A stretch of DNA of 63,689 bases, filler included, from Hyphochytrium catenoides (taxonomy: Eukaryota > Protista > Hyphochytriomycota), in NCBI GenBank assembly GCA_900088475.1. It is 9 parts of 9 records of this genome, joined end to end, with 100 filler letters (N's around TTAATTAATTAA, not from the genome) between each part and the next. Parts side by side here need not be neighbours in the genome. Positions count along the whole stretch, not along the records: positions 40,157 to 57,944 come from FLMG01003209.1; 8 more parts are not named here. One strand, written 5' to 3'. The notes beneath the pieces were generated by a model, which saw nothing but the letters and a program-made list of their open reading frames with translations, was not told the origin of the DNA and ran no database searches. The translations under genes and the position numbers were made by a program. Positions 40,157 to 57,944 of the stretch are shown here, piece after piece; position 1 is the first letter of the stretch, and each line of letters begins with the position of its first letter.

Positions 40157-40849
40157 GCTTGAGCATGAACCCATCCTTCCTCCAAAGCGCTTGCTTTCAA
40201 ACGTCACAATCTCCCTTTCTTTCAGTTCTTAGACCTGGGCAACCGAGTGCTCAGCTCCCGGCTGAGAGACTTCAGTAAGTGAGGACGAAGCTGTCTGCAG
40301 ACGGCAAGCTGGGGCTAATCAGTGGGATAATTAGGGACGTGAAGCTTTTATCGGCTTGTTCAAGAAGAAAGTATTGGGATGTTCCCTTCCCGCTTATTTT
40401 CGGTGTTGCCGGCCGTTGTGCAGTAAGCTCCTAGGGTCAGAAGATAGCTTACTTTCTTACTATCGTCCCAAGTTTCGGTCGCGGGTGAATTTCCTCCTCT
40501 CTGAGCTGCGTGCTACGATGATCTGGTGGTTTTATAAAGATAAAGCTCCCGAATTTACCCACTCGAGTCCGCAAAAGTACGACGTTATTTCTTTTGTACA
40601 AAAGTGAAATAATGTGTCAATAGATTCTCAATTGATTTTGCCTTTTATGTATATTCTTGCATAAAATGAAGAGAGGCTGTTGGCTGTTTTTGCTCTCTTC
40701 TAATCATTAGCTGTGGCTTATTTTTTATTATCGAAGATATAAAAAAATCTATCGAGTCTCCATCCTCATGGCCGCCGCTCCTTCCGCATCGGCTCACTGC
40801 GTCGCTGCGGCCTTCATTCAGTTGCTGACCTTCTTGGGCGGCGCTTTAC

Positions 40850-41555
40850 CTGCTGCTTCTTAGCCTTCCGTGTGCGCGCGCTCATCTGAGTAGAGGATGG
40901 ATAACAGTAGAGATGCACTTTCTTGCGACAAAGGGTCCCTTGATGGCGATTGAAGCCTTCTTGCATCTTTTTATGTGCCGCTTCAGGGGTCAAGAGATTC
41001 TGGTTCCGCTGGAGGTAGATGGAGACTGAACATCCTCTCCAGGAAGTTGATCTGCTGGGGTGTGAACTTGTGGAGCTGCGGAAGTTGCGTCCTCTCTTGA
41101 TGTACATGGCCATCTTCACAGACTCGGCTTAGTAGTTCTGGTTTGTGGTCCATGCAAAGAGACTCGGTAACTACGGCGTTATGGACGTCAAGGAGGAAGA
41201 GGCAGACTACTTCTCGGTCGCGGGATTTGCCAAGCCTTATCTTGACTCTTGCTTAGCCTGCAGGCAAGGCTGCAGCGCAGCAGCTGCTGACAACAGACAC
41301 AAAGCAGCCACAGATTCTCAAGTTCGCACTCCAGCAAATCACCATTCTGCAGAAGACGTTAAAATCTCCACCTAACTTAGCCGCAACAGAATCTCTTGAC
41401 CCCTGAAGCGGCCCATGAGAAGAAGCAAGAACGTTTCCATCGCCATAAGAAGCCCTTTGTCGCAAGGAAGAGCGTCTGTACAGTTACCCACATCGGGCCA
41501 AAGTATTAGCTCTTTTTGCCAAGCACTCTCGCACGGAACGCTCAGAAGGTGCAGT
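40850..41555. repeat. Diverged inverted repeat (arms ~40850-41087 and ~41302-41555) made of degenerate coding fragments
   Basis: Exact 26-nt inverted match between 40977-41002 and 41387-41412 (cagaatctcttgacccctgaagcggc), with alignable flanks on both sides. Confidence 0.8.
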
Positions 41556-42087
41556 CCAGCCAAGAAGCCCAGCAGGATGCCGTAGAAGGGACACTTATTG
41601 GAAAAAGACAATGACTAAAAAAAGACTGGGAGCAGGGAGCAGATGAAGGCGGAGCGAGGCCACAGAGAAGGAGCTGAGATGTGATAGTTAAAACCGCGAC
41701 TAAAGCTCATATTCAAAGATCGCCAGCAACCTCTCTCTCTCTTCACGGTATACAATTACATGGAGCGCGTCGCAGTACGAAGTAAGCTCCCCTCTCCTGC
41801 TTTGTCTTCTTTCTCTTTCGTCAGTCTACCGGTTTGCTGAGTATCAGTAGCTAGGGCCCGCATGTAACACCTTCTTGGGCCGTTTGACTTTCAAGCAAGA
41901 ATGTGTTGAGATCCTTATGCTATTCATTGTTCTGTGCCGCGCAAGTGCCTCAGATGAGAGATAGATGATGGCGAGGCGTCAAGCTGAAGCTCTCACTTCA
42001 GATCGACGACGTTAGAGGACTCTCTTTCCGCTGTCAACAGAGATTGCTATCCGCAAAGGTGGTCGGATGGCCAGGATATAGCGACAG

Positions 42088-44655
42088 CTAGCAGCCAGCT
42101 CTTCCCTCTCTTCTGACCAGATACAGTCCTGGATGCTGAATGACCTAATAGAGGCGAAGACTTAGAACGGGTTGGTAGCACTGCGGCAAATGTCACTAGG
42201 ATTTCCTTGCCTCTTGACCTCCCTGTGCGCCAAGGCGGTGATCCGGACTACTAGTGAGGAGACTTCTGAAGGACAACCAAGGTAAGCAGCCAGTACGTCT
42301 CATCTACGTCGTCTACCCCTCTAACCTCTGCTCCCATATCCTTATCAGAAGAGTACCCTCTCAGTTCTGTTCTTCTCTCTGGCTCCCTCCTCTCCCTCTC
42401 CCGTTCCCTCCTACCATTCTTTCCTGGCCCCGCTCCCGGGTTAGCGTCTGCAGACAGATAGACAACCCCCGCGCGCTCTTCTTTTGCAAGGTTCCTCGTA
42501 GCCTTTGTCCTAGCCTTTGCCTGTCCTACGCAATTTCTAACAAGCAGACAACATATCTCACCGGACTAGATCAATGAGAGCTTGGTCTTCATCGGGGCAA
42601 CAGCGCAGCAGAGATGTCTCGGTATAACCTCCAAGAATGCATCTTTTTATCTCTTCAGAGGGTAGTGCAGCGTCCCTCTTATCCTTTTTGTATGAAAACG
42701 GAGGTATACCCGTCAGAAGCTCATGAAGCAGAATGCCCAGCGCCCTTGTCCAGAGAGCGACATCAAGCCGTGAGCACCAGGACGAACAGGGTCCCAAAGC
42801 ATATGAGAGATGAGGAGGTCAGAGAGACAGCTGACCAAGAGAGAAGAAAGAAAGATAGTGGACGAGCAACAGAGAGAGACAGGGGAGAGAGAGAGTGTAG
42901 AGAAAGAAGGCTTCTGAGGAGTTCTTGGCTTACCACCAGTCCACTTGGGTCCCATAGCCGTCGTCTCTGATCATTTCTGGAGCCATGCAGTGGAAAGTGG
43001 TCACCCCAGTCTCTTGCTCCTCTTTTGTGAGGCTGATACACAGGTTTGTGTCCTTCTCCACTCTGCAGGCGCTGTTGAAGTCAATCAGGCAGGCGTCTCC
43101 CCGGGCATCTAAGAAGTTATAGAAGAGATTTAAGGGTCATCAGATCGTTCTTGGTTCATGCTAGATATATTTCTCTTTCCGACATCCTCTCTCACAGTCC
43201 TATCTCTTCTCTTGCCTAACTAGTGGGCTAACTCGATAGCGGAGAGATAGCATTATCCTTACCAAGCAGTACATTGGTCGTCTTTAGATCCCTATGACAA
43301 TATCCAAGGTTATGCACAGCGCTGAGGGCAGTAGCTATTTGCCTTCCAGAGTGGCGCACGTCCTTGCAAGACAGACGCTGTTCTGGAGTAGAGAGGAGGA
43401 TGGCGCGCAGGCTGCCACCTGGTAGATAATCCAAAGCTAGATAAATGTGATCACAGTCTGAGGGAATAAAAGGTAGCGTTGGCGAATCAGAGTGAGTTGG
43501 GATGGTTGAAGAAGGCAGCGTGCGGATTGGGAGCCACGATATTGATCCATCTTATGGACAACCGTAGGAGCATCGAAAGTGATCTCAGGAATCAAGCAAG
43601 GGAATGAGAGGAAACATCTGAATAAGAGGGAAAATAGGAGGAGAGACACAGGGCGAATTGATGAAGGATGCATTTAAGAAAGAAGAAAGCTTCCACCGGA
43701 AGGAGCGGAACAGATAGAATGAGGAGGACTGGTAGGCAAGCTCCTCAGAACCTTCAGCTACGCACCATTAAAGGTCTCAAGGAGCCCTACGATAAACCTT
43801 TGTCCTCGCAGGGCCAGAAGTGCCTCTTTCTCCATCAGACACCGTCGAAGAGAGAGCTTGGTGCGGATCTTGTCCCTTGGAATAACCTTCAGCGCTAGAG
43901 CACCAGAGAAATAAAGAAGAAAGCGGCGTTAGAACGCTTGAAAAAGGAAGGTTCTCTCCATCTTACTGAAGCAGACAGTGATCAAGAAACTGCCGGTCCA
44001 TCAGGAAGCCAAATACGTAAAGTAAGAGACAGAAGGGACAAAGAGAGCGCGAGCGCGATTGAGGGCAAGGGAAGAAGAGAGAGAGAGAGAGAGAGAGACC
44101 ATAGGCAATAAAGGGCGAGTGTAAAGGCGAGATAGAAAGGACGAGACAACGAAGGGAGAATCACGCAGCAACCAACAGAGGAGAGTAGGAGAGAGAAAAG
44201 AACGTAACCACCGTGCTCCGCAGGCGGATCAATGGACGACCCCCAACTGAGAAGCAAAGACTAGGAATAAAGAAACGTGAGCTTTCTCTCGCCCGGGCTT
44301 GGCTCATGGTTTGTAGAAGAAAAATTGCTAGGCAGAATGGACAGAATACTGGGGAGGAAGCAGTAGCTGGAAGTTACGCGGTGACAAAGAAGAAGAACAG
44401 TCAGTGTGACTCGGCGTACCGCATTCCTTCCCGGAGAGGTGATGACGGCAATGATACACGCTGCTAGTGCAGAGATGCCAATGCATTGAAGAAAGTTAAA
44501 GCACTACCGAGCGAGTTAGGAAGGACAAGACGGCAGAAAGATAAAGATGAGTAGAGATCAATGCTCGGGGATGACAGCGAAGGACGCCACAAATATAGAG
44601 AGGACTGCAAGCCAGACAGACATTGGACATAGATCAAAGTTAATATTAGCCAAGG

Positions 44656-44701
<46 letters not shown>

Positions 44702-45043
44702 NNNNNNNNNNNNNNNNNNNNNNNNNNNNNNNNNNNNNNNNNAGAGAGAGAGAGAGAGAGAGAGAGAGAATGCAATTGGCATAGTAGGGAAGGAGGAAGG
44801 AGGTAGGTGCTGCTCGTGGTCAGAGAAAGCAAGAAGATACGGGGTAGGAGGGAACTACGGGTCCCGGCCCTAACTATCAAGAAGCTCGTGTAACCTCCAA
44901 CTCTCGTTCTCTCCCATCGATCGTCTTACCAAGCAAAGGCTCCTCGGCCCAGCACTCTGCCAGTTGTCCAGCCCTTGTGCTCCCGCAGCACCAGCAGCAG
45001 GGAGCTCTGGTGTCGGCCTTCGTTTTTCTCCTTCTTCATCATA
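42088..45043 (-). CDS. Divergent Ser/Thr protein kinase (AGC-like); multi-exon, start uncertain
   Basis: Spliced motifs [92 protein letters not shown]. Confidence 0.87.
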
Positions 45044-47366
45044 CTTGGTGCAGCAGGAGACTCTCCTTTCTTCATCACTCTCCTGTTCCTCTCCTGGTCC
45101 TTTCTCTTCCCTATCTGTTTTCTTTGTTGGCCGTGCGCATACCAGGTCCCAGCCTGGCTCCTCCTCTGGATGGGGCGTGGAAAGTTGTTTGAGGATGGCT
45201 AACAGCTGCCTCACAAGCCTACCATCGTGGCAAATCTAGCCAGAGGAGAAGATGATGGGACAGAACCCCACGGTGGCTGGCTCTCCTCGTTTTAGCAGCT
45301 GTGGATACTAGAAGAAGGGCAAGGTGCCCCTCCCGTTAACCAACAGCCGCAATCAGAAAGCCAACTGGAACTCGACGACGGCCGCTTCACTCTTTCTGGT
45401 GGCCACACGCTTGATGATTTGCCTCCTAAGTTTTCTACAGGACGCCTTGGCATCTTATTTCACTATCTTCAGTCTAGCATCTCCACTCAGCCAGCGGCAA
45501 GAGGACGACGAGCATGCATAAACTTGACAGCTCCTCGAGCAGCACAATGGCGCTCACGAGAAGACAGGGCTGCGGCCTACGACCACTTCATTGCACCTCT
45601 AGCTGCGCCTCTCCCGTCACTTCGTCGCATGATCAAGCAGACAAGCGGGCGAAAGGCACAGAGACAGCAACAGCACGGGCAGGGCAGCAGCAGCAGCAGC
45701 AGCCCCCACTGGCTGCACCACCGGCAGGTTGCTCAGCTGGTCATCCGTCTCTCATGTAAAGCTGGCAACTTCACACTGAAAGTCTCCCAACCCCCCTGCG
45801 TTTCCCTTGTTGCCCGTGGGAATATTAACTATGGCCTTATTAAAGCTGTATTAATGTATGTACTTGGCACGTCAGAGTGCGGTGCCCTGGCGGAGGATGG
45901 AGCTGGCAGCGGACAGCCGCTGGTGCCCGACCACGGCGCGACGCTTCATACTTCAAGGATATAAAGCACCTGCTAAGTCGTCCCTGCTGACAGAGTCCTA
46001 TCTATAAGATCATTCATGCTGCGCCATGCGGGACAGCTAGACGCTACCCTCAGCACCCTCAGCAGCGAGAGCGATGAGTCCATGCATAATCAGCATCACG
46101 ACGGAGAGACACCGCGCCCTCATAATAGTGCTTGGGCTTCACAAGCCTCTCCGTTCATAAAGCGCCGCTGCAGGACCACTCCGCCTTAAAACTTATGGAG
46201 GTAGAGAAACCTAAAGAGTCCTCCTCTCGCTAGGCAGGTCTGCTGAAGATGCCCTTTGATTGTTAGAAGAAGAAGATGGGGCCTTCCTTGTCGGTCACCA
46301 TCGCAGTCTGCTGCTGCTGCATGATGTGTATATATATAGAGAGAGAGCGAGAGAGGACTAAGTAAGAGGTCCTACTCTTCCTATTATTCTGAGTGACCTG
46401 GGATTGGTGGCTCAGCAGACCGACCCGGAAAGACGTGAAGACTTCTTTCTCTAGTGATTTCTTAGGCCAGGGATGTGCCAGAGAGCAGGTAAGATATGTG
46501 TTCTCGCGTTCAAGGATGATGATGACGCGGGCTTCAAAGGAGAACACGCATCGTCAAGAAGGAGAATGGCAGAGTCAACAGCGGCGTCTACTGAAGAGGC
46601 AACACAAGCAGCAGCAGGATGGACGCTCTAAGATTTAAGGGCAGCTGCGCAAGCCGGAAAGCCTGGGCAGAAGTGCTTGTCAGCCAGACAGGAGAAGCAG
46701 CGCTATTTATTAGTGCTTCTTTTTCCTCGGAGTTAAAAGCTGCCTCATAATGCGCTCTCTTTATTAGCTTGTGCAGCCGTGGGTTCCCCTTCTCCAAGAG
46801 AGAAACTTCGCTAAAGGATCGTGTTGTCTGGTGCTGAAACCTAGTAGACGATACGCCTTGCAACGGCGATAAGCTCTATCCATAAGATTTGAGGCGGATG
46901 AAGGAAGGAGGAGCGGGATCCACTGATGATTATGAGCAAGGATGCGTACCGGCCGATTTGTCCTGCAAATGATCGCATGGGTGCGGCGCCGAGCAGCTTA
47001 GGAAGCCTGCGATCTCAAGGACGTCACGAAGATTGTCCAAAGAAGTAGCAGTAACAATCGGTATGCACAGGAGGAGAGCTTTGCGCCAGCTCCAATCGTC
47101 AGGTCTTCCTGGTTCCTGTCACGATGAGTGTGTGGAGGAGTCACCTACAAGCCCCTCGATGTAGGACAACAGGATGTAGCACTGTCGAGCATCTGTGACG
47201 AGGGATATCGCTATGTTCCCATTCGACTTAGAGTCAGGCCATCAGGGCCCTTTCACTCGCCAGGAACCTAACGTCCCACCTGTCTCTCATTCCCCGAGCA
47301 GTGGCGCGCATTGTAGGGAGTCAGAGGCCATCAACGTCATGGCTCTGTCTCACCCTACTAAAGAGC

Positions 47367-48919
47367 TCAAACATTTCGGTGCCAAGAAGAGACCATGAAG
47401 CCTCTTCTATCACTGACGTAAGCCAAATAGTTCTCTTGCATGCGCTGCCAGCCATGCTGAGCAGTGGAGCGTGAATATGCGTACAAGCCCGCCTCATAGA
47501 TCTTACGGCTTCGTATTTTGTCCTGCTCCTTAGAGAGCCACCACGCAATGATTCTCGCGAGTTCAGGCGCTCTCTCCTCCATAATCACATCGTGGACATC
47601 CACCACAAATTTCGACCAAATGGCATGAGGAGTGGGTGACGTTGGCACGTTACCCATGAGCAAAGCTCCTGACATAGCAACCTCCACGTATTTGCGTAGA
47701 TCGTAGTCCCGGATAGATCGCGAGACAAGAGCCACCTTGCATTGGAAGAGAAAGTCAATGTACCTCTCATATTGTTGCTCCAAGACCGTAGCGCTGATGC
47801 CAAACCGGCGCCTCTCTGCCTCGGGCAATACTTCCGTGTACCCGAAGTGGGGCAACACGTGAGCAACCAGCCCATACTTCGCAAAGGTACCATCAGCTAT
47901 CCAGTCGTCACCTTTGTCCGGACGGGATACCAGTAGCGGTCAACCCGGCCCATGAGGCAGAAGTCATAAGGTCTTTCCTCAAACCTTCTTTTGCTTCGCT
48001 GGTGTTGCTTTAGCATCCTATAGAAAGTGCCAGGGAGGACAGTTTGAGGGAACAGAGAGATCAATGTCTCAGGATATTGCCTAACCAGCTTCGTCTCTGG
48101 ATCTGCAAGGTGATGGAACAGCGCCTGGAAATCGTTCTCGTAGGCCAAAAGGATGATCTGGAAGAGGCGCCATGGCCATTTCTTATGGGGACCCCAGACA
48201 CAGTTCCAGCGAGAACTATCGTGGTATGGCTTCTCGTTCAAGACACATTCGTAGCGATATGTCATATACACGGCGCCGGAGAGGTTAATATCATCAGGAT
48301 CGTCTTTGGCAATGACCAGAGAGAAAGGCTCCCGCCAACGCTTCTTGATGTTCTCTTCAACCGTGATGGAAGCATTCCAGCCGGGCCAACCCGGTCCCCA
48401 CATGATAACCCTATCGCCGCGCTTTCCATCTGCGGCGAAGGCTCCGCAATAAGTATGGAATAGGTGGCGATCCATGACGGCGTCAATGTACCACCATTCC
48501 ACGAAGAACAGGGTTCGCGGCCCTCCTTGCCTTTCGGCTGCCGGTATGGTCTCGTGCGGCGATAGTAACAGGGAAGAAGGATCGGAAAACCTGCAGGACC
48601 TTTCATATTGCGCGTGCAATAGTAACGTCAGTCTTAGGCATTCAGAGCCGTCGAGCTCCATCCCGGGAACGCCCATCAGATCTATGGCACTGAGTAGGAA
48701 AGCTCCATCATCGTCATCATCGGCTGCAGAATATGCGCTGCTGTTCTTGCTCTCTTTCAAACCACCAGCTTCGTGTTCCAACTCGATGGCCGTGGGACAC
48801 GTCTCATCTTCATCGGTTGCTGAAGGAAAGCTCGTGAACGACGAAACTTGGTCATAACCAGAACGCAGCAAATATAAGCAGATGAGCCGAACCACCAGCA
48901 TGCCGCAGATCTTCTTCAT
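47367..48919 (-). pseudogene. Intronless type-II membrane glycosyltransferase-like gene (GT-B C-terminal, YkvP/CgeB-like) split by a 1-nt frameshift near 47900
   Basis: N-terminal TM segment, MWGPGWPGW, FCLMGRVDRYWYPVR, then in the next frame IADGTFAKYGLVAHVLPHFGY...YIDFLFQCKVALVSRSIRDYDLRKYVEVAMSGALLMGN. The frameshift could be an assembly error. Confidence 0.65.
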
Positions 48920-50004
48920 CCCTTTCTGCAGAAAAAGAACCAAGCACTCTTCTTGACTTCTCGATCGTGTCTCAAACCTTCATTATACCCAGAACCATGA
49001 AGGTCCGACAGGTACACAGCAGCTTCAAGAGCTTAGATACAGAGGGGTCCGAACGAGCCTCTTGTCATCCGACTCGGTGATGATGGGACGGACAGAGCAC
49101 CGCGGAAAGATCGGCCATTGAACCCGAGTGGAATGGCTGGCAGATCCCTCGATGGTTGGCTCTGACACACGGTGGTATGAGCCCTTCGTCTCTGGCTCAC
49201 AGGCCGCGAGACCACAGCCCAGGGAGCATCAGCATCAGACAGAATGCTGATGAGGAGCGAGGAGGAGGCGAGGCCGCCCGCGCCGCCGCGCCATTTCACA
49301 ACTTCAAGGTCTTCTTTCACCTTTGATGGACCAATAGAGCCGCTAACGGAGATATAATCCATTTCTGATCTACATTCCGTAGAGATTCCGCTAAACGCTG
49401 GAGCCTTGTCTTTGGAAGTGTAGTGGCTCTAAAGTAGCGGTAGAGTTTAGCGGGATTCCTATCCCTATTTAATAGCCTTTGAGATTTACAAACCGACAAA
49501 AGCAGGAGTAAGGGCTCTCGAATCCTTCGCTGATTATTAGGAAGGATAGATTCTATCTCCATAAAGAGTGGGCTACTAGCAGAGTTCGGGCCACAACAAC
49601 GACGCACAGATTCGGCGGATTGCTCGATTGGCCCCTGGGGGATGTCTGAATTGATGCTTTGCCGCCGCGGCATCATCAGCCGATGATCTCTAGAAATGAA
49701 AGCTCAAAAACTCATTCTCCCTGTTGGCGAGTGCTCTCTCTTTGTCTCTCTCTTCTCTCTCTGTCTAGGAGAGCGAGCTCTTATCTTTTCTCCTCTCCCT
49801 TCCCATTCCCATCCTCTCTCCGCTTCTCCCTGTATAGCTCGCGCCTACCTTGCATTGTGTTCGAGTCCCTACTGTCTCGTCTTCTCTCTCTCCGTCAATC
49901 ACCTCTTTTCTTCTTTCTTCACTGTGTCAGTGGCCTCCCATCTCCTTCTTCAGTGATGCTGTGAAAGTATCTTAACGTCTAGAGTGCACCCGTTATAGAC
50001 TTTC

Positions 50005-53000
50005 ATGGATAAGAGAGAGGAAGTTAACAAGCCTCTCCACGGACTGCTGCGTCGAACCCAGGTTTACTTAGAGTGAGTCTCCCCTTGGCACGACATCGTC
50101 ATCTTCCTCCACCTTCCTGTTCCTCTTCCTTGTGTCTGTCCTTCCGTCTCCTATGGCTAAGTCTGATAAGCACTCTTCCTCCATCTTCTCGCAGAGATCC
50201 ACCGTCTCTCTCTTTACTGAAGCGCTCTTGCGTCCTCCAAACCTCTGCGGAGCAGAAGGTTCTCGAGCATTGGGTGCGTAAGTTTATCCTTGGCTTGGCA
50301 GATAAGGCAGCTGGAAGCTGGGCCCTCGATCTGCGGACAGGTGAGAGCGAGCTTGATAAAAGCTCTAGCGCTGAAGTAGGAGAGTATGGCTATGAGCAAA
50401 CAGCAGCAGACGCCGAAGAAGAGGAGGTACGGAGGCTATACTTTCTCTTTGTCGTCTGGTCATCATTAGGATCCCCGTCTTTTCGTTCTTGCGACGCCGA
50501 TCGCTCAATGCCCTGACTTCTTTCTCGACTCGCTATCTCATGTGTGCTTCTCACTCTCGCTCTCTCTTTTCTCTCCCTCTCTCTCTCTCTTGTCTCGCAC
50601 GCACACACACGGTCATTGAGTCCCTTTCTCGCTACTCACACTCTCCAGATATTGTCATACGAAGAGCTCTTAGCACGACATGGCGCTCTCGGCCAGCTCC
50701 CAATGAGCTTCGGTGGAGGGGAGAGCTCGGACAAGCGACACAAAGGACAAAGGAGACAGAAGAGGCGGACTAAGGGACCAAGGCCATCAGTTCGGACCTC
50801 GGACAACGACAGCAGGAAGGAGAAGGAAGAAGATTCTCTTCCTCCTGCCCCGTCGGCAGTCTTAGAGACAGATGAAACACCACCAAGGCCTCCGCCGTCT
50901 TCCGCAACCGTAGCTTCTCTACCTTCACCCTCTTCTCTTGTCTCTTCTCCTCGTTGTGCTGCTTCTCCTTCTCCCTTCGTCCCTGGGTCGCTTGTGGAGT
51001 GTCGGTATGATGCCGATGGGCTATGGTACCCGGCGCTGGTGGGGCGGGTCGAAGGGGAAGATGAGCAAAAGACGGCTGACGTTGTTTTTCTATGGTACAA
51101 TAATCGTCAGACCTCTCCTCTCTCTCTCCTCCGAGAGCCCAGTTCTTCCTCTGTTCAGTATTACCATCAGCTCATGGCATCTGCTCAGCAACAAGAGGAA
51201 ATAGCGGCCACACAGGAAGCCGGAAGTGTTTTGGCAGACGGGACTGAGATGACCTTGGATAGCCCCATGCTAGACCGAGAGACTTGGGAGGAGGAAGAAG
51301 GAGCAGACGGCGAGGAAGAGGTGGAGTTACAGACTAGCGAAGCCGTCAATCAGGGAGTGAAACGAGATAGGAAGCCAAGCAAGCGCAGCCAGTGCTCTAG
51401 ACGAAGCCGGGACCAGGATATTGAGAATCCCTACGGCAAGCATACTATCCCTTTCTTCTCTTTCATTAGATGCGTCTCTCTTTGCTGTCTCTCTTTCTCT
51501 CCTGCCCTCTTTCTTCTTCATCCTGTCACCTCTCTCTCTCTCTCTCGCAGTCTCTCGTTACTCTTCTTTTGTCTACTCACCTTAGTATCATGCTTCCTCC
51601 CTCTGCTGGCCGCGGCACATCGCTGCTCTTACTGTCAGACCAACGTCTCCCTTCTGCTTGATAATCCTTGCAGGTTGTACGACCCCTGAAGTCATATCGT
51701 ACATTCTTCCCTCCTATCCTACTCTCTTTCTTTCCGTCCATCACTTCCTATCTCTCCTCTTTCCCTTAATGTTCCTCATGAATCTGACTCATGAGACTTC
51801 CTCTCATGTTCCACAGCATCCGTACACCGCAAGTATTGGTCTCAACGCTATCGTTTCTTCCACAAGTTTGATGACGGCGTGCAGCTGGATGCAGAGGGAT
51901 GGTTCTCGGTACTCTCATATATCTTGCCTTTCTCCCAATATCTCGGGGCTATCCGTCCAGTCTTTCGCTCTCCTGCACCTTTCCCCTTTGGAGTTGTGCC
52001 TCTTTCTGTATGTTCCTTCACCTTTCTTTGTCTCTCTCTCCGCTGTTCTGCTCCTTTCCTATCCTCTCCCATTCTTATCGTTCTCTTCGTTTGGCAAGCC
52101 GTATGCGACCTTTCTGCCATCCCTTGGACCTCTTGGCTCGGAGGTTGTCTGCCACTCGTACTTGGCGCTATCGAGCCTTGGTCTCCTAGTTTCATATCTT
52201 TCACTATCAGACTGACTAAGCTTGGCGCCGCTTCTCCTTCTCTTTTCAGGTAACCCCTGAGACCATCGCGAAGCATCTTGCCGCGCGGTGTGCTTGCTCC
52301 ATCATAGTGGACGCTTTCACTGGCTGCGGGGGAAACGCAGTGCAGTTTGCCTCCTACTGCTCTCTGGTCTTGGCAATCGATCTAAATCCAGAGAGGCTTC
52401 ACATGGCGCGGCATAATGCGCGCATCTACGGCGTGGAGGATAAGATTGAATTTATTTTAGGCGACGCGACTAAGATTCTTCCAAGGTCGGAGAGTGGACT
52501 GTCAAGGGCGGACAGAGAGAGGGAGAGAAGAGACTATTAGAGGCAGATATTAGGGTTACTGAAGCTCTAGGAGGTAGACATCAAGAGAGAAGAGAGACTC
52601 AAACGGGCGTCATCCTCAACCAAGAGGTCCTTACCACTGTCGTCAGCTCCTATCTATCTTCCATACCCATCCTAAGCTATCTCCTCCTTCTCTCTCTTTT
52701 TATAGGCTAAGAGCGGACGTCGTCTTCCTCTCACCCCCATGGGGAGGGCCGGAGTATATCAACGCTGAGGTATGTAATTGGCTGCCGATGTCTGTGCGGC
52801 TTTCTGTCTGTCTACCAGGCTGCTTATCTCTTTCTCTTCCTTTCCCTTCTCTCTTTTCCCTTGTCCTCTGCAACGGTGCATGCCCCGTAAAGTTCACTGG
52901 TACTTAGCTCTGTGTCGAGGCTGTACGGGCACCTCGCGCTTTAACCTCTGTATCTTTGCCTATCTTCAGGCTGCTGCCTCTCATGAGCTTGCTTCTCTTT

Positions 53001-53332
53001 CGCATGTCTAACCAAAACGTCTTTGGCTTCGGGTTCTATAGTCGTACGACCCTCAATCAATGCTGCAAGTAAGCGGTTTGAATGGCGGCCAGCTTCTGTC
53101 CTTGGCGTTCCAGGCGGCCGAGAACGTGGTTTACCTGTTGCCGCGCAACACTGACGAACAAGGGTTCACAGCGATGGGAGGACCATTGCAGGAGGTGGAG
53201 GAGCAATACCTGGATGGCAAATTGAAGACAATCACCGCCTACTATGGTCCACACTTCCAACACCATGAGGAGCCCATTATAGCAGAAGGAATGCATGAGG
53301 GTGAAGAATTGCAAGGGAAGGAGGAAAGCTGA
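50005..53332 (+). CDS. TGS1: Trimethylguanosine synthase (cap hypermethylase) with an N-terminal SMN-like Tudor domain; multi-exon
   Basis: KYWSQRYRFFHKFDDGVQLDAEGWFS|VTPETIAKHLA, DAFTGCGGNAVQFA, HNARIYGVEDKIEFILGD, ADVVFLSPPWGGPEY, YLLPRN, ITAYYG. Tudor segment at ~50976-51135. Confidence 0.93.
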
Positions 53333-53936
53333 CATGCTACCCTTGGTGTTCTGAAGATTATAAACTCTTCTCCTGTCACACGACGGACAGCACATACAGG
53401 ACAGGACTGGTGCCTACAACGGCAGTCCGTGCGAGGAATAATCGGCATGCGGAACGGCCTCCGAGGAAGTACATCCGAAAGGCCAACATTGCACTGGCTA
53501 CGACCCTGGGTCATGGAAAGCACGGACGCGGGGGAAAGTCGAGTAAGGTTGTCCCAGACGCGTGCATGCATCCGTTAGTTGAACGCCAGAAAGTCAGTGT
53601 TTGTGAGAAAGAGAGAGGAAAAGTGGTAATGCTTGGGCACAAGCACGGTTAAAGGCCGAAGGAGCTCTATGGAGCTGGCGGGCACTCCAGCGCAAGAGGC
53701 ACATGTGGTAGCGCCATGGGACGCGATGATAGCTGATGTCTCATAGCGATAGCGGTAGGCAGCTCCATAAGGAAGCGCGAAAGGTTATGAGTGCACGACA
53801 TGACCGCTGGAGTGACAGCAAGGGAATGCAGAGAGGGCAATGACAGAATAATTATCTTATAAGTTAGTGGGGTTGAGGCGTATTCAGAGAAGCTCGAGCT
53901 AGACGTGAAGAAAGAGCGACACGATTCATAGATTTC

Positions 53937-54748
53937 TTAGCGTCTGTATGGCGCGCCAAAGTATTGTCTCTCTATGAGCCTGTGGTGCCTCTGGACCATC
54001 TCTGGATCCTTATTAGTGCCTATAATGTTATGGGCAGCAATCTTCTCCTTCAGCACTGCTCTGCCCTCCTCTACCCCATCGCTTGACTTGCTGAAGACAA
54101 AGTGCTTTCTCCCAGTGTCACCTAGAGAATGGGCCAGAGAGAGCAAGATGCGACCATGAATGAGATGACCGAACCAAACAGAAAATCCTCAGGGGATGGA
54201 CGTTTCCATATGTCGAAGTAGAGGGAGAACGTGGTTGGCAGACAGAGAGCAAACGATAAGAAGAGGGACACGTGGATTGAGAGATTGGTGTCCAGAGCAA
54301 TGTCCTAGCGATGCCAGGTGGAAACCCAGCGGCAGAAGGAAGGAGAGCGCAAGCTTGCTCGACATGCCTGTGATTCTTTCCCGCTTGGGAGTCACAATCT
54401 TTAGATATCCTATCTTTCCCTGTGCTTCCCTTAGCATTCGAGCTACCCTGCAAACAGAGGCATGGTCAGGACCTTTAGCGTGGCTAGAGAATTGTATGAG
54501 ACAGGAGTGTGACACCGGACAAAGTCGTGCCACGCTGCCAACAAAGAAACTGATAAACTTCAAGCACCACACCAATGTGTGTTCCTTCTTTGGACTTACG
54601 TTTCCTGGTCCGTGACTGATTTGTTTGTTCTGAACTCTCTCTGAACTTGCTCCGTCACCTTCATCCGTTTGTCACCAGGAAGGGAGCGAGCTAGCTTAAG
54701 CAGCTGTCTGTACATGCGCAGCGTGCCTTCACGGTTCGATGCAGCCAT
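53937..54748 (-). CDS. LYR-motif (complex 1 LYR family) mitochondrial protein; 3 exons
   Basis: MAASNREGTLRMYRQLLKLARSLP...VQREFRTNKSVTD, then VARMLREAQGKIGYLKIVTP and a C-terminal DPEMVQRHHRLIERQYF. Confidence 0.82.
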
Positions 54749-56362
54749 ACTTTCTGACCCTGATAGGTACGTAGCTATAAGCTCTAGAGGAGAGAGTATA
54801 GTTCAAGGTCCACCGCGGTCGATGAATGTTTATAAATGAAGATTATTGCGGCTCTGATCTCTTCTTAGTAGGCGACTCAAGAGGTTTGCCATCATCCCAA
54901 AGCAGAACGCGAACAGTGACAGCAGGCCCGTTAGCAGCTCTTAAGAACGGCCCGTGGTTTCATCCATGGTTCCTTGGTCTGCTGCCCATAATAATATAGT
55001 AATAAAGGGCAGAAGAAGACAGCGGCGTGCTACTACTAACGCTATTTGATGTCCAGTAGACGACAGGTTAGTAGGGGGAATGGCGGCTCAAACGACAAGA
55101 AGACGGAGAAGAACGATAGATGAAGAAAAGACGAGAGATAGAAGATATCTGGCGCTCCATACAGAGCCCAGCCTAGGTAGCGCATGATGACCACCTCTCT
55201 TAGGGTAGGGACAGGGCGTGGTGAAAGGGGGCGACTCCGCAAGGGGGCAATGTCAAGGTAACCGCACTGGGTGCCCCACCACCCATACAGCCATCAACAA
55301 TCTATAATGGCGGCAACCTGCTGCGCGGGCCCCGCCTACTAGCGTCGTCCATTCAGGCAATAGAGTGGGCGGGACACTCCTACTGTGCGTTTTAGAGCGC
55401 CATGTGGTTACAGCTGCTCTATTGAAGATCAAGAGAAGGCAGGTTCGACGTCACGGAGCAGGATACCGAAGCCATCATCATTACCCTCCTGCTAGCACAA
55501 CAGAAGGATATCATCACAATGCTGGAAACCGGGACTCTCGTCATTCTCCCTTTATCCTTAGCAGCATAGCTAGCACAGAAAGACTACTACTAACTAATGC
55601 TTCACTTTCTCCTGTCGTCCAAGAGATTGATGACTTGCCCTTTTGCCGTCGAGCTGATGGAGGGGTCTGCCAGTGTTGCTTCCTTCCTCCCTCTCGTCAT
55701 GATGCCGCTACACCACAGCTAAGAACATCACTGCTAGCCATGCGGCGGGTAAGGGCTAATCAACGAGAAGACCGCCACAGATCTCTTTTAGCTGCTGCCC
55801 TCTTCTTAAAAGTCGAGGGCAATTCATTGCGCAAGCAAAAAGAGCAACACCATGCCGGGCAATCTAAGGACGGAAGATGAAGATTTCGTATTATTGAGCT
55901 TGAGATCGCGATGATGATTCTTTTTTGGCAATGAGCTCCATGCAAAAAAGGGCTTTAAGTCCGTAGGTCAGAAGGCCTCTGTCTCGAACAGTAAGCACTT
56001 CATTTTACTGTTACTAGATAGACCGTTGATTGTTTGACAAAGGCACTGTAAAGAAAGCTTGAAGTTTGACTTAAAGACCTTGATAATTCCTGGATGAAAG
56101 AAACGAATGTTTTCATCTAAGCCCAATAGTATTTATGCCCTTGGCCTTCAGGTCAAGGGTCTGACAAACGAAATTGTGTTCGCTGAGCGTAAGCGAAGCG
56201 TCTAGTGGATAGGGCATGAGCCCTCCCAATAAATCATCAAAAGCCAAGCACAGAAAAGCAATGCCTAGCGAAGAAAGACAGAGAATAAGCACAAACACAC
56301 AAAGCAAGGGAGAGGGGAGAAAGGGAGAAAGGGAGACTTCAAAGAAAAAGGCAAATGATGTG

Positions 56363-56402
56363 TGTATGTATGTATGTATGTATGTATGTATGTATGTGTG
56401 TG
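56363..56402. repeat. (TGTA)n tetranucleotide microsatellite
   Basis: tgtatgtatgtatgtatg... read directly. Confidence 0.9.
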
Positions 56403-56881
56403 TCACTCTAAATATAACCCTCATCAAAGCCAAGCAGAAAAAAAACGCAGAAAACCCAAAGAAAGACAGTGATTGGTCAGAAACAGTAGTCAAAAGCTCA
56501 AACGAACCCTCAAACCACAAAGATGGTGCGTATATTTACGAAAACCAAAGGATAGCCTATTTTCAGTATTCCCAAAACAAACACTTAGCGCTATTCCCCA
56601 AGCCTGTAACCGATTATAAATGGAGCTCTCAAAAGAATGACGTCAAAATCAGAAGCTTGGAGGAACAATAGTTCTATACAAAAGAATCCACTATGTAACG
56701 CTTCAACAAAGAATAGTTCCATACACAGGAATACGAAAAACAAGGGATAGTCTACTTTCAGGGCTGACAAGACTTGGTTCTGTACAACAAAGTCAGTGCT
56801 ATTCCCAAAGCCTGTAATCTAGTCTTATTATTAGAGCACCAAAAAGAAACGACAAAATTAGAAGCCTGAAGAACAATTTTA

Positions 56882-57296
56882 CAAAAGAAGCCACTTTGGA
56901 GGCTGGTGGCAGTAATACGACAAATAGGAGACACTGTCATCGAGGACAACGAAAGATAACATTCTAGAGCGATATCCAAAATAAAAAACGAGAGAGAAAC
57001 AGAAATTTGAAGCACAATACACTCATAAGGCCTTAGTATGGGAAGAGATGAGCCACAATATACAAAAGAAGCCACTTTGGAGGCTGGTTGGCAGCAATAC
57101 GACAAATAGGAGACACTGTCATCCAGGACAACCAAAGATAACATTATAGAGCGATATCCAAATAAAACAGGAGAAATTTAAGCACAATACACTCAAAGTA
57201 TGGGAGGAGATGAGCCACAATATACAAATGAAGCCACTTTGGAGGCTGGTTGGCAGCAGTACGACAAACAGAAGACATTGTCTGTCATCCAGGACA
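56882..57296. repeat. Degenerate tandem repeat, ~2.4 copies of a 160-180-bp unit
   Basis: Units beginning caaa(a/t)gaagccactttggaggctgg start at 56882, 57063 and 57225. Confidence 0.88.
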
Positions 57297-57944
57297 GAGC
57301 TGAACAAGGAAGGAGCATCCAAGTACGGAGAAGGATCAGAAGGGGAGAGGGAGGCTGTATACAGCAGGACATAATAAGCTGTGCAAGGATGATGAAAAAT
57401 ACAGGAAGCAGCAGCAAAACAAAAGGCAAAAGCAGGACAACTGAGGACACAGAACAAACAAGGAGCAACAGCAGCACAGAAAGAAGCATAGACATCACTA
57501 TCAATGCGACAAACAGAAGTCACTTTGAACGAGCCTGTGAGACAAAACCCCAGCAACCCAAAGAGAGACTGAAGAGAGACGACAGAGGTAGGCAGAAACA
57601 GTAGTGACATAAAACTACCAAAAAATTGACTCGTCAAAAGGCAGGCGCAGACAGACAAGCAGGGCGTACCAAAGAGAGGCGGAAGCAGTGAATACACAAG
57701 TAAGGAGCAATAATAGTAGCAGACACCAGCAATCCAACAACCATTACCAAGCAAGGTAACAGAAGCAGCAAAAAAACAAGAACACAGTAGCAACAACAAT
57801 CAAAGAGCAGGTCACATCAGCAATGAATGAACAAGCAAGAAGCAGCAAGGGCAGTAGCAGCCCCAAAAAGCATTTACCAAGCCAGGCAACTAACTAACAG
57901 CAGAAGCAAAGCAGCGCAATGTGGCTGCTCGCTTACGCTCAGCG

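What the first reader, a model, noticed from the sequence alone, without database searches (positions are those of the whole stretch)
50005..53332. TGS1 fused to an SMN-type Tudor domain with an intact aromatic cage
Seen: VECRYDADGLWYPALVGRV...ADVVFLWYNNRQTSPLSLL lies in frame upstream of the TGS1 methyltransferase. It aligns by eye to SMN Tudor (AIWSEDGCIYPATI...VVYTGYGNREEQNLSDL), with cage positions W102/Y109/Y127/Y130/N132 read as Y/Y/F/Y/N. Established: in animals the SMN Tudor binds symmetric dimethyl-Arg tails of Sm proteins and SMN interacts with TGS1 during snRNP cap hypermethylation; human and yeast TGS1 lack a Tudor domain. Inference: a Rosetta-stone fusion that lets the cap methylase read methylated Sm cores directly, a potentially SMN-independent snRNP maturation route.
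Basis: partly seen in the sequence, partly recalled or inferred. Interest (0 to 1): 0.7.

Follow-up and report, generated by a model that had tools for sequence, protein, structure and literature searches.

The report
TGS1 cap methylase carrying a Tudor domain
An intron-containing eukaryotic gene encodes the snRNA/snoRNA cap hypermethylase TGS1 with a methyl-arginine-type Tudor domain in its N-terminal part; the same unreported architecture occurs in several other protists and would let the enzyme dock directly on arginine-methylated RNP proteins.

Summary
On the + strand, one multi-exon gene ends at the stop codon at 53330-53332. Exons 2-5 encode a complete TGS1 methyltransferase. Exon 1 (50649/50703-51435) carries a roughly 55-residue Tudor domain (core 50985-51146).

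An AlphaFold model (pLDDT 89) superposes on the SMN, Tudor-SN and TDRD3 Tudors at TM about 0.8.

The case for one gene is strong but rests on comparison, because no RNA run was listed:
- The Tudor lies between two TGS1-specific elements.
- Exon phases fit.
- Tudor-TGS1 homologues align collinearly across a GC-AG intron.

The fusion is not unique. Fifteen of 253 TGS1 proteins collected carry it, including a brown alga, a TARA picoeukaryote and an MMETSP transcript. I found no paper describing it.

The cage composition matches that of TDRD3, whose first-position Tyr selects asymmetric dimethyl-arginine, so reading of symmetric marks on Sm tails is not the only likely reading. SMN independence cannot be tested on a 17.8-kb piece.

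The parts
50196..50426 (+). Tentative upstream coding exon. It is acid-rich, in the same frame, and would join by a GT-AG phase-0 intron at 50427-50648. It has no in-frame ATG, so the true start lies further upstream and is unresolved.
   Evidence: frame, GAG|GTACGG donor, CCAG| acceptor. It has no Pfam hit and no homology support. This part is inference only.
50649..51435 (+). Exon 1 as far as resolved; the first in-frame ATG is at 50703. In order it holds the TGS1 N-terminal motif, a basic cluster, a Ser/Pro-rich spacer, the Tudor domain, an acidic linker, a second basic cluster and 'ENPY'.
   Evidence: Open frame. The tblastn HSP of the Tudor-TGS1 homologue P0034 runs from 50799 to 51434 and resumes at 51819.
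50661..50720 (+). Conserved TGS1 N-terminal motif (acidic ... L ... G-L-P-x-x-F-G), read here as EELLARHGALGQLPMSFGGG.
   Evidence: GLPxxF preceded by an acidic/Leu-Met stretch occurs in 56 of 253 TGS1 proteins from animals, fungi and protists, always N-terminal to the methyltransferase (alignment A2).
50967..51146 (+). Tudor domain (four-stranded beta barrel in the model; core 50985-51146). Cage codons are Y 51006-51008, Y 51027-51029, F 51087-51089 and Y 51096-51098; the Asn is at 51102-51104.
   Evidence: HMMER alignment to SMN Tudor; family profile against PDB: SMN at 3.9e-8 and 1.1e-10; pLDDT 89.3; TM about 0.8 to SMN, Tudor-SN and TDRD3; alignment with Tudors of other TGS1 proteins.
51436..51816 (+). 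Intron 1, 381 nt, GC-AG (ACG|GCAAGC ... CCACAG|), phase 1. The split codon G+CA encodes Ala.
   Evidence: This junction restores the spacing 'NP + 6 residues + KYW' seen in the homologues (A2) and matches the HSP ends. The junction is inferred and has not been seen in RNA.
51817..51908 (+). Exon 2: the helical N-terminal extension of the TGS1 catalytic domain (KYWSQRY...EGWFS). It has no in-frame start codon of its own.
   Evidence: tblastn gives 55-61% identity to the homologues. The extension is essential for cap binding in human TGS1 (PMC2709555).
51909..52249 (+). Intron 2, 341 nt, GT-AG, phase 0.
52250..52485 (+). Exon 3: the AdoMet-binding part of the methyltransferase (VDAFTGCGGN, AIDLNP).
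   Evidence: Pfam PF09445, 70.3 bits, E=1.9e-19. In the exhaustive search, 2915 proteins hit at E<=0.001, with best identity 69%.
52486..52705 (+). Intron 3, 220 nt, GT-AG, phase 2. The split codon AG+G encodes Arg.
52706..52769 (+). Exon 4: the cap-binding motif FLSPPWGGPEY, including the Trp that stacks on m7G.
   Evidence: Pfam PF09445, 27.8 bits. W766A abolishes activity in human TGS1 (PMC2709555).
52770..53041 (+). Intron 4, 272 nt, GT-AG, phase 0.
53042..53332 (+). [quoted passage not shown] KLKTITAYYG), with the stop codon at 53330-53332.

Best explanation
The region holds one protein-coding gene of an unidentified intron-bearing eukaryote. It encodes trimethylguanosine synthase (TGS1), the enzyme that converts the m7G cap of snRNAs, snoRNAs and telomerase RNA into the m2,2,7G cap. 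Counted from the ATG at 50703 the protein has 471 residues, and probably more upstream.

A single canonical Tudor domain sits in the N-terminal region. It lies between the TGS1-specific 'GLPxxFG' motif and the catalytic domain. The catalytic domain has every motif needed for AdoMet and cap binding, so the enzyme should be active. The Tudor has the fold and the complete four-aromatic cage plus Asn of dimethyl-arginine readers.

The most likely mechanism is that the Tudor docks the methylase on arginine-methylated RG/GAR tails of proteins already assembled on its RNA substrates. Candidates are Sm B/D1/D3 on snRNAs and fibrillarin or Gar1 on snoRNAs. Cap hypermethylation would then be coupled in cis to RNP assembly. 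In animals that contact is made through Sm tails and SMN.

Shown here: the gene structure (by comparison), the identity of both domains, and the recurrence of the fusion in other protists. Inferred: methyl-arginine binding itself, the isomer read (sDMA or aDMA), and the target proteins.
For: TGS1 identity:
- Pfam PF09445 matches exons 3, 4 and 5.
- Exon 3 is 60-69% identical to hundreds of TGS1 proteins.
- The motifs VDAFxGxGGN, SPPWGGP and PRN and the KYWxQRY helical extension are all present.

One gene:
- Five collinear tblastn segments from Tudor-TGS1 homologues cover the Tudor and exons 2 to 5 in order.
- The P0034 match ends at 51434 and resumes at 51819, exactly at the proposed GC-AG junction.
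- The conserved 'ENP-x6-KYW' spans that junction.
- The TGS1 N-terminal motif lies upstream of the Tudor.
- Exon 2 has no start codon.
- The exon lengths sum to 1416 nt, which is 472 codons.

Tudor identity.

Recurrence:
- Fifteen proteins in 13 clusters, out of 253 TGS1 proteins collected, carry a homologous Tudor.
- They include Scytosiphon promiscuus, a TARA Oceans scaffold and an MMETSP transcript encoding both domains in one ORF.
- In two of them the Tudor passes Pfam's gathering score: P0071 with SMN_Tudor at 23.4 bits and P0156 with TUDOR at 27.8 bits.
- Tudor-bearing proteins cluster on the methyltransferase tree, needing 5 changes against a mean of 13.7 in shuffles.

Background: TGS1 binds SmB and SmD1, Nop58 and Cbf5, and SMN (PMC2709555).
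Against: - No transcript evidence exists for this genome. No RNA run was listed, so all splice junctions, including the non-canonical GC donor of intron 1, are inferred.
- The start codon and the 5' exons are unresolved.
- The window's Tudor alone is below Pfam's threshold.
- No binding data exist for any TGS1-linked Tudor.
- In half of the family members the Asn is replaced by E, D, K, H or A, and in one the third cage residue is Leu, so ligand binding may not be uniform across the family.
- Close relatives without the Tudor exist (Nannochloropsis, Aphanomyces, Pythium), so the domain is dispensable for TGS1 function as such.
Confidence: 0.65

Rival explanations
1. The Tudor reads symmetric dimethyl-arginine on Sm tails as SMN does, and this provides an SMN-independent route of snRNP maturation.
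For: SMN Tudor is the best PDB match of the family profile. Sm tails are the classical sDMA ligands, and TGS1 is known to contact SmB and SmD1. Cap hypermethylation of snRNAs depends on the Sm core (established knowledge).
Against: The first cage residue is Tyr in 9 of 12 family members and Phe in 3, and it is never Trp. In TDRD3 a Tyr at this position selects aDMA and excludes sDMA, and only the Y566W change allows sDMA binding (PMC3526276). Whether SMN, Gemin2 or PRMT5 are present in this genome could not be examined. TGS1 acts after Sm-core assembly, so a Tudor on TGS1 would not replace SMN's assembly function.
Confidence: 0.25
2. The Tudor is a TDRD3-like reader of asymmetric dimethyl-arginine. 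It would target TGS1 to GAR/RGG proteins methylated by PRMT1-type enzymes, for instance fibrillarin and Gar1 on snoRNPs, and so serve snoRNA or telomerase RNA capping rather than Sm recognition, or in addition to it.
For: The cage composition Y/Y/F/Y/N is identical to TDRD3 Y566/Y573/F591/Y594/N596. The model superposes on the TDRD3 Tudor at TM 0.80-0.89 and rmsd 1.1-1.3 A. snoRNAs are TGS1 substrates.
Against: In overall sequence the family is closer to SMN (44 bits) than to TDRD3 (35-37 bits). Cage composition alone is a weak predictor of isomer preference, and SMN itself binds both isomers. No experimental data exist.
Confidence: 0.3
3. The Tudor exon belongs to a separate upstream gene, and the apparent fusion is an accident of adjacency.
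For: There is no RNA evidence. Intron 1 needs a GC donor. The frame of exon 1 stays open to 51689, so a Tudor-only product ending there is formally possible.
Against: TGS1-specific motifs flank the Tudor on both sides. Exon 2 has no start codon. The same order and spacing occur in single ORFs of other organisms.
Confidence: 0.04
4. The domain has the Tudor fold but serves another purpose, such as methyl-lysine reading, RNA binding or self-association.
For: Tudor-fold domains are functionally diverse. The Asn and one cage position vary within the family.
Against: All PDB matches with E<1e-4 are methyl-arginine readers. Methyl-lysine Tudors (PHF20, PHF19) score far lower. The window's own copy keeps all five key residues.
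Confidence: 0.1

Closest known systems
TGS1 / PIMT (human) and Tgs1 (yeast): RNA cap guanine-N2 dimethyltransferase, Pfam PF09445
   Same: The catalytic domain has the helical N-terminal extension and the AdoMet and m7G-binding motifs. The 'MGLPxxFG' motif in the N-terminal region is shared with animal TGS1.
   Different: Human, other animal and fungal TGS1 proteins retrieved here show no Tudor. They reach methylated Sm proteins through direct tail contacts and through SMN. Here a Tudor is built into the enzyme.
SMN Tudor domain (PF06003; PDB 1mhn, 4a4e)
   Same: It is the best sequence and fold match, with equivalent cage positions and Asn.
   Different: The first cage residue is Tyr, not Trp102. 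No Gemin2-binding region or YG box was detected: Pfam found only TUDOR on exon 1. This gene is therefore not an SMN orthologue.
TDRD3 Tudor domain (PDB 3pmt, 2lto)
   Same: The cage composition Y/Y/F/Y plus N is identical, and the fold match has TM 0.80-0.89.
   Different: The sequence score is lower than for SMN. The TDRD3 context of OB-fold and UBA domains is absent.
Plant and green-algal TGS1 with a WW domain
   Same: A small peptide-reader module is inserted at the same place, between the N-terminal motif and the catalytic domain. WW domains were found in the Bryopsis and Calypogeia TGS1 proteins.
Tudor-TGS1 proteins of other protists (P0071, P0039, P0034, P0156, P0157, P0159/P0269, P0004, P0155, P0010, P0001, P0160, P0068, P0022)
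   Same: They have the same architecture and a homologous Tudor that is 25-39% identical to the window's.
   Different: All are unnamed and uncharacterised. The window's copy has a roughly 65-residue Ser/Pro spacer before the Tudor and a three-residue insertion in the beta2-beta3 loop.

Membership tests
TGS1 (RNA cap guanine-N2 methyltransferase, PF09445) | Profile match above the curated threshold | tested here: met
   Exon 3 scores 70.3 bits and exon 4 scores 27.8 bits, against a cut-off of 22. Exon 5 scores 15.8 bits, as a partial C-terminal match.
TGS1 (RNA cap guanine-N2 methyltransferase, PF09445) | AdoMet motif VDxFxGxGGN and the acidic residue of the second strand | tested here: met
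   IVDAFTGCGGN and AIDLNP are in exon 3. These columns are invariant in A2.
TGS1 (RNA cap guanine-N2 methyltransferase, PF09445) | SPPWGGP motif with the Trp that stacks on m7G | tested here: met
   FLSPPWGGPEY is in exon 4. The role of W766 is described in PMC2709555.
TGS1 (RNA cap guanine-N2 methyltransferase, PF09445) | Helical N-terminal extension (KYWxQRYxxFSxFDxG...EGWxSVTPE) needed for cap binding | tested here: met
   It spans exon 2 and the start of exon 3.
TGS1 (RNA cap guanine-N2 methyltransferase, PF09445) | Cap dimethylation activity | not testable with these tools
   This needs an enzyme assay.
Tudor domain, methyl-arginine-reading type (Pfam PF00567 / PF06003) | Profile match above the curated threshold | tested here: not met
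   The window sequence alone scores 15 bits on PF00567, against a cut-off of 23. Homologues in the same family do pass: P0071 at 23.4 bits on PF06003 and P0156 at 27.8 bits on PF00567. The family profile hits SMN Tudor at E=1e-10.
Tudor domain, methyl-arginine-reading type (Pfam PF00567 / PF06003) | Tudor beta-barrel fold (four strands in the model) | tested here: met
   The AF2 model has pLDDT 89.3 and four strands. Foldseek gives TM 0.78-0.89 to SMN, Tudor-SN, TDRD3 and SPF30.
Tudor domain, methyl-arginine-reading type (Pfam PF00567 / PF06003) | Four aromatic cage residues plus the H-bonding Asn | tested here: met
   Y, Y, F, Y and N fall at the positions of SMN W102, Y109, Y127, Y130 and N132.
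Tudor domain, methyl-arginine-reading type (Pfam PF00567 / PF06003) | Binding of dimethyl-arginine peptides | not testable with these tools
   This needs ITC, NMR or pull-down.
SMN protein (orthologue of survival motor neuron) | Gemin2-binding N-terminal helix and C-terminal YG-box oligomerisation motif | tested here: not met
   Pfam reports only TUDOR on exon 1. The flanks are TGS1-specific.

The most novel reading that the evidence does not exclude
A lineage of protist TGS1 enzymes has taken on a TDRD3-like Tudor that is selective for asymmetric dimethyl-arginine. Trimethylguanosine capping would then be licensed directly by the arginine-methylation state of RNP proteins (snoRNP GAR domains, or Sm tails methylated by a type I enzyme), without an SMN-type adaptor. 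This would be a cis-wired 'methyl-protein to methyl-cap' relay not known in animals, fungi or plants.
Probability: 0.25. Interest if true: 0.65.

Novelty: new variant of a known kind. Interest (0 to 1): 0.5.

Why it matters
TGS1 must recognise assembled RNPs, not just capped RNA. In yeast and animals this is done by loosely defined contacts with Sm, Nop58 and Cbf5 tails and with SMN.

A TGS1 with a built-in methyl-arginine reader is a natural Rosetta-stone link between protein arginine methylation and cap hypermethylation. It offers a simple, testable system: one domain, five residues, and defined peptides. That system can address how RNP assembly licenses capping, and whether sDMA or aDMA is the signal outside animals.

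Plant and green-algal TGS1 proteins carry a WW domain at the same position. This suggests that the N-terminal region of TGS1 is a slot for interchangeable targeting modules.

Tried and rejected
- RNA evidence: the look-up of sequencing runs listed no RNA run for 49600-53700.
- The search for homologous proteins on the exon-1 ORF (region 54-300) gave nothing among proteins of 210-667 aa. That blank is limited by the length window.
- AF2 on the single sequence was poor, pLDDT 55. It was replaced by the model built with alignment A1.
- The ESM Atlas feature search of exon 1 scored 0.82 or lower and was uninformative.
- An exact look-up of the window ORF found no record.
- The organism could not be identified. 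The neighbouring 347-aa ORF hits only JGI 'hypothetical proteins' at 37-41% identity. Neighbouring ORFs have no Pfam hits, and there are no Rfam hits. A coccidian origin, which I guessed from the CT-rich introns, is not supported by any search.
- The placement of the window on the methyltransferase tree, using 78 columns of exon 3 only, is unresolved.
- GT donors for intron 1 in the right phase exist at 51226, 51487, 51550, 51571, 51634 and 51691. I rejected them in favour of the GC donor at 51436, because only that one reproduces the conserved NP-x6-KYW spacing and the HSP boundaries.
Full report
**What is there.** The piece (40157-57944) has about 50% G+C. Between 50.6 and 53.3 kb on the + strand lies a set of short open segments separated by CT-rich stretches. 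Four of them encode the TGS1 catalytic domain:
- 51817-51908 (KYWSQRY...EGWFS)
- 52250-52485 (VTPETIAKH...GDATKILP; Pfam PF09445 at 70.3 bits, E=1.9e-19)
- 52706-52769 (FLSPPWGGPEY; PF09445 at 27.8 bits)
- 53042-53332 (YLLPRN...KLKTITAYYG, then the stop codon; PF09445 at 15.8 bits)

The intervening sequences have GT-AG ends and compatible phases. The AdoMet motif, the cap-stacking Trp and the helical N-terminal extension, which PMC2709555 shows to be essential in human TGS1, are all present. The enzyme part looks intact.

**The Tudor.**
- phmmer of the exon against all PDB sequences returns six hits, and all are Tudor domains: Drosophila Tudor-SN 2wac at E=0.0014, then SMN chains.
- The printed alignment to SMN puts Y, Y, F, Y and N of the window on W102, Y109, Y127, Y130 and N132. 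These are the cage and the H-bonding Asn (PMC9481570). The by-eye alignment is therefore reproduced.
- Pfam on the single sequence is sub-threshold (PF00567, 15 bits against 23), so I looked for relatives.

**Relatives with the same architecture.** An exhaustive HMMER search with exon 3 found 2915 TGS1-like proteins at E<=0.001.
- Among the best 150, eight carry a segment homologous to the window's Tudor in their N-terminal part (phmmer E down to 1e-7 in that set; iterated profile E from 1e-15 to 1e-27).
- A profile search with the full-length fusion proteins added five more clusters. The total is 15 proteins in 13 clusters out of 253 collected.
- Two pass Pfam's own thresholds for Tudor families: P0071 on PF06003 at 23.4 bits and P0156 on PF00567 at 27.8 bits.
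- Known origins are the brown alga Scytosiphon promiscuus, a TARA Oceans 0.22-1.6 um scaffold, an MMETSP transcript and one EukProt entry. The rest are unnamed Logan, ENA or JGI contigs.
- In P0001 and P0269 both domains lie in one uninterrupted ORF on the contig, and P0269 comes from a transcriptome assembly.
- On a FastTree of the methyltransferase domain the Tudor-bearing proteins are clustered, needing 5 changes against a mean of 13.7 in shuffles and 0 of 500 shuffles as low. They fall into two main groups. One sits in a clade with Nannochloropsis relatives that lack the Tudor. The domain has therefore been gained or lost more than once, or lost repeatedly.

**Domain identity with the family profile.** A 10-sequence alignment of these Tudors (A1) hits SMN Tudor best in the PDB (E=3.9e-8). 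A 12-sequence alignment (A3) gives E=1.1e-10, followed by Drosophila Tudor, TDRD1, SPF30, SND1 and TDRD3. Methyl-lysine Tudors come only at E>1e-4. AlphaFold2 with A1 gives pLDDT 89.3 and pTM 0.71, with four strands. Foldseek ranks Tudor-SN, SMN, BmPAPI, TDRD3 and SPF30 Tudors first, at TM 0.78-0.89 and rmsd 1.1-1.7 A.

**Is it one gene?** No RNA run was listed, so the argument is comparative. It has five parts.
1. tblastn of seven Tudor-TGS1 proteins against 49-54.5 kb gives collinear segments: Tudor (50985-51137), then exons 2, 3, 4 and 5.
2. The P0034 match runs through the whole linker to 51434 and resumes at 51819. A GC-AG intron at 51436-51816 (ACG|GCAAGC...CCACAG|) is in phase. It creates one Ala codon and reproduces the conserved 'ENP + 6 residues + KYW' of the homologues.
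3. Exon 2 has no in-frame ATG.
4. Upstream of the Tudor, at 50661-50720, lies the motif 'acidic...L...GLPxxFG'. I found this motif in 56 of 253 TGS1 proteins, including mammals, lancelets, molluscs, fungi and protists. The Tudor is thus bracketed by TGS1-specific elements.
5. From the ATG at 50703 the five exons sum to 1416 nt, or 471 codons plus the stop.

The conserved motif begins before that ATG, right after an acceptor at 50647-48. The true start is therefore probably in an upstream exon.

**How it probably works.** TGS1 contacts SmB and SmD1, Nop58 and Cbf5, and, in humans, SMN (PMC2709555). It is established knowledge that snRNA cap hypermethylation needs the Sm core. A methyl-arginine reader in the enzyme would supply such a contact in cis.

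The specificity is open, however. The cage Y/Y/F/Y plus N is identical in composition to the TDRD3 cage (Y566, Y573, F591, Y594, N596). Sikorsky et al. showed that Tyr566 is the selectivity filter for asymmetric dimethyl-arginine, and that SMN, SPF30 and SND1 have Trp or Phe there (PMC3526276; see also PMC3281842). Across 12 TGS1-linked Tudors this residue is Tyr nine times and Phe three times, never Trp. The Asn is kept in six.

By overall sequence the domain is nearer to SMN, and by cage it is nearer to TDRD3. An aDMA reader would point to GAR-domain proteins of snoRNPs at least as much as to Sm tails. 'SMN-independent' cannot be judged from 17.8 kb. In any case TGS1 acts downstream of Sm-core assembly.

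**Novelty.** Full-text searches for TGS1 or trimethylguanosine synthase together with Tudor found only papers about SMN's own Tudor. The architecture is detectable with Pfam, since PF00567 was precomputed on P0156. However, none of the carriers has a functional name, and none was listed as coming from UniRef. I rate it a new variant of a known kind: a known enzyme and a known reader domain in an undescribed, recurrent combination. The TGS1 proteins of Bryopsis (a green alga) and Calypogeia (a liverwort) carry a WW domain at the equivalent place, which suggests a modular targeting slot.

**Limits.**
- The organism is unidentified.
- Splice junctions and the 5' end are inferred.
- No binding data exist.
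- The joined protein was neither searched nor folded.

Noticed in passing
window 50661-50720; proteins P0231, P0253, P0205, P0071 and others: A short N-terminal motif (acidic stretch, L-M, then M-G-L-P-x-x-F-G, usually followed by a basic cluster) is shared by TGS1 proteins from mammals to protists (56 of 253 collected). I do not know of a described function for it.
   Followed up: partly
P0058 (Bryopsis sp.), P0127 (Calypogeia fissa), P0084: TGS1 proteins from a green alga (Bryopsis) and a liverwort (Calypogeia), plus one unnamed contig, carry a WW domain (Pfam PF00397; P0084 scores 32.1 bits) at the position where the window's protein carries the Tudor. The N-terminal region of TGS1 seems to accept different reader modules.
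   Followed up: partly
window 51436-51816: The best-supported first intron has a GC donor (G|GCAAGC) instead of GT. The other four proposed introns are GT-AG.
   Followed up: partly
window 47367-48943, minus strand: Two adjacent long ORFs (348 and 163 aa) are probably exons of one gene. They have no Pfam hit, and their only relatives are three JGI 'hypothetical proteins' at 37-41% identity (E about 1e-43).
   Followed up: partly
window 44663-44769: A run of N (an assembly gap) is flanked on both sides by (AG)n microsatellite, 19.5 and 13.5 copies.
   Followed up: no
window 55657-57656: G+C drops to 40-43% with a strong excess of A over T on the + strand (AT skew up to 0.44). An (ATGT)11 microsatellite lies at 56358-56401.
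   Followed up: no
P0068 (Scytosiphon promiscuus), residues 140-308: The Tudor of this annotated brown-alga protein is split in two halves (140-163 and 281-308) by about 117 residues. This looks like an intron retained in the gene model.
   Followed up: no
window 42558-42797, minus strand: This ORF reads like protein-kinase subdomains IX-X (…LGILLHELLTGIPPF…) by eye, but Pfam gave no hit at E<=0.01.
   Followed up: partly
P0153 (Daphnia pulicaria, 488 aa), P0154 (Allomyces macrogynus, 707 aa): These two score far above all other TGS1 proteins against the full-length profile (698 and 571 bits) although they cover only about 44% of the query. A duplicated methyltransferase domain is possible.
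   Followed up: no
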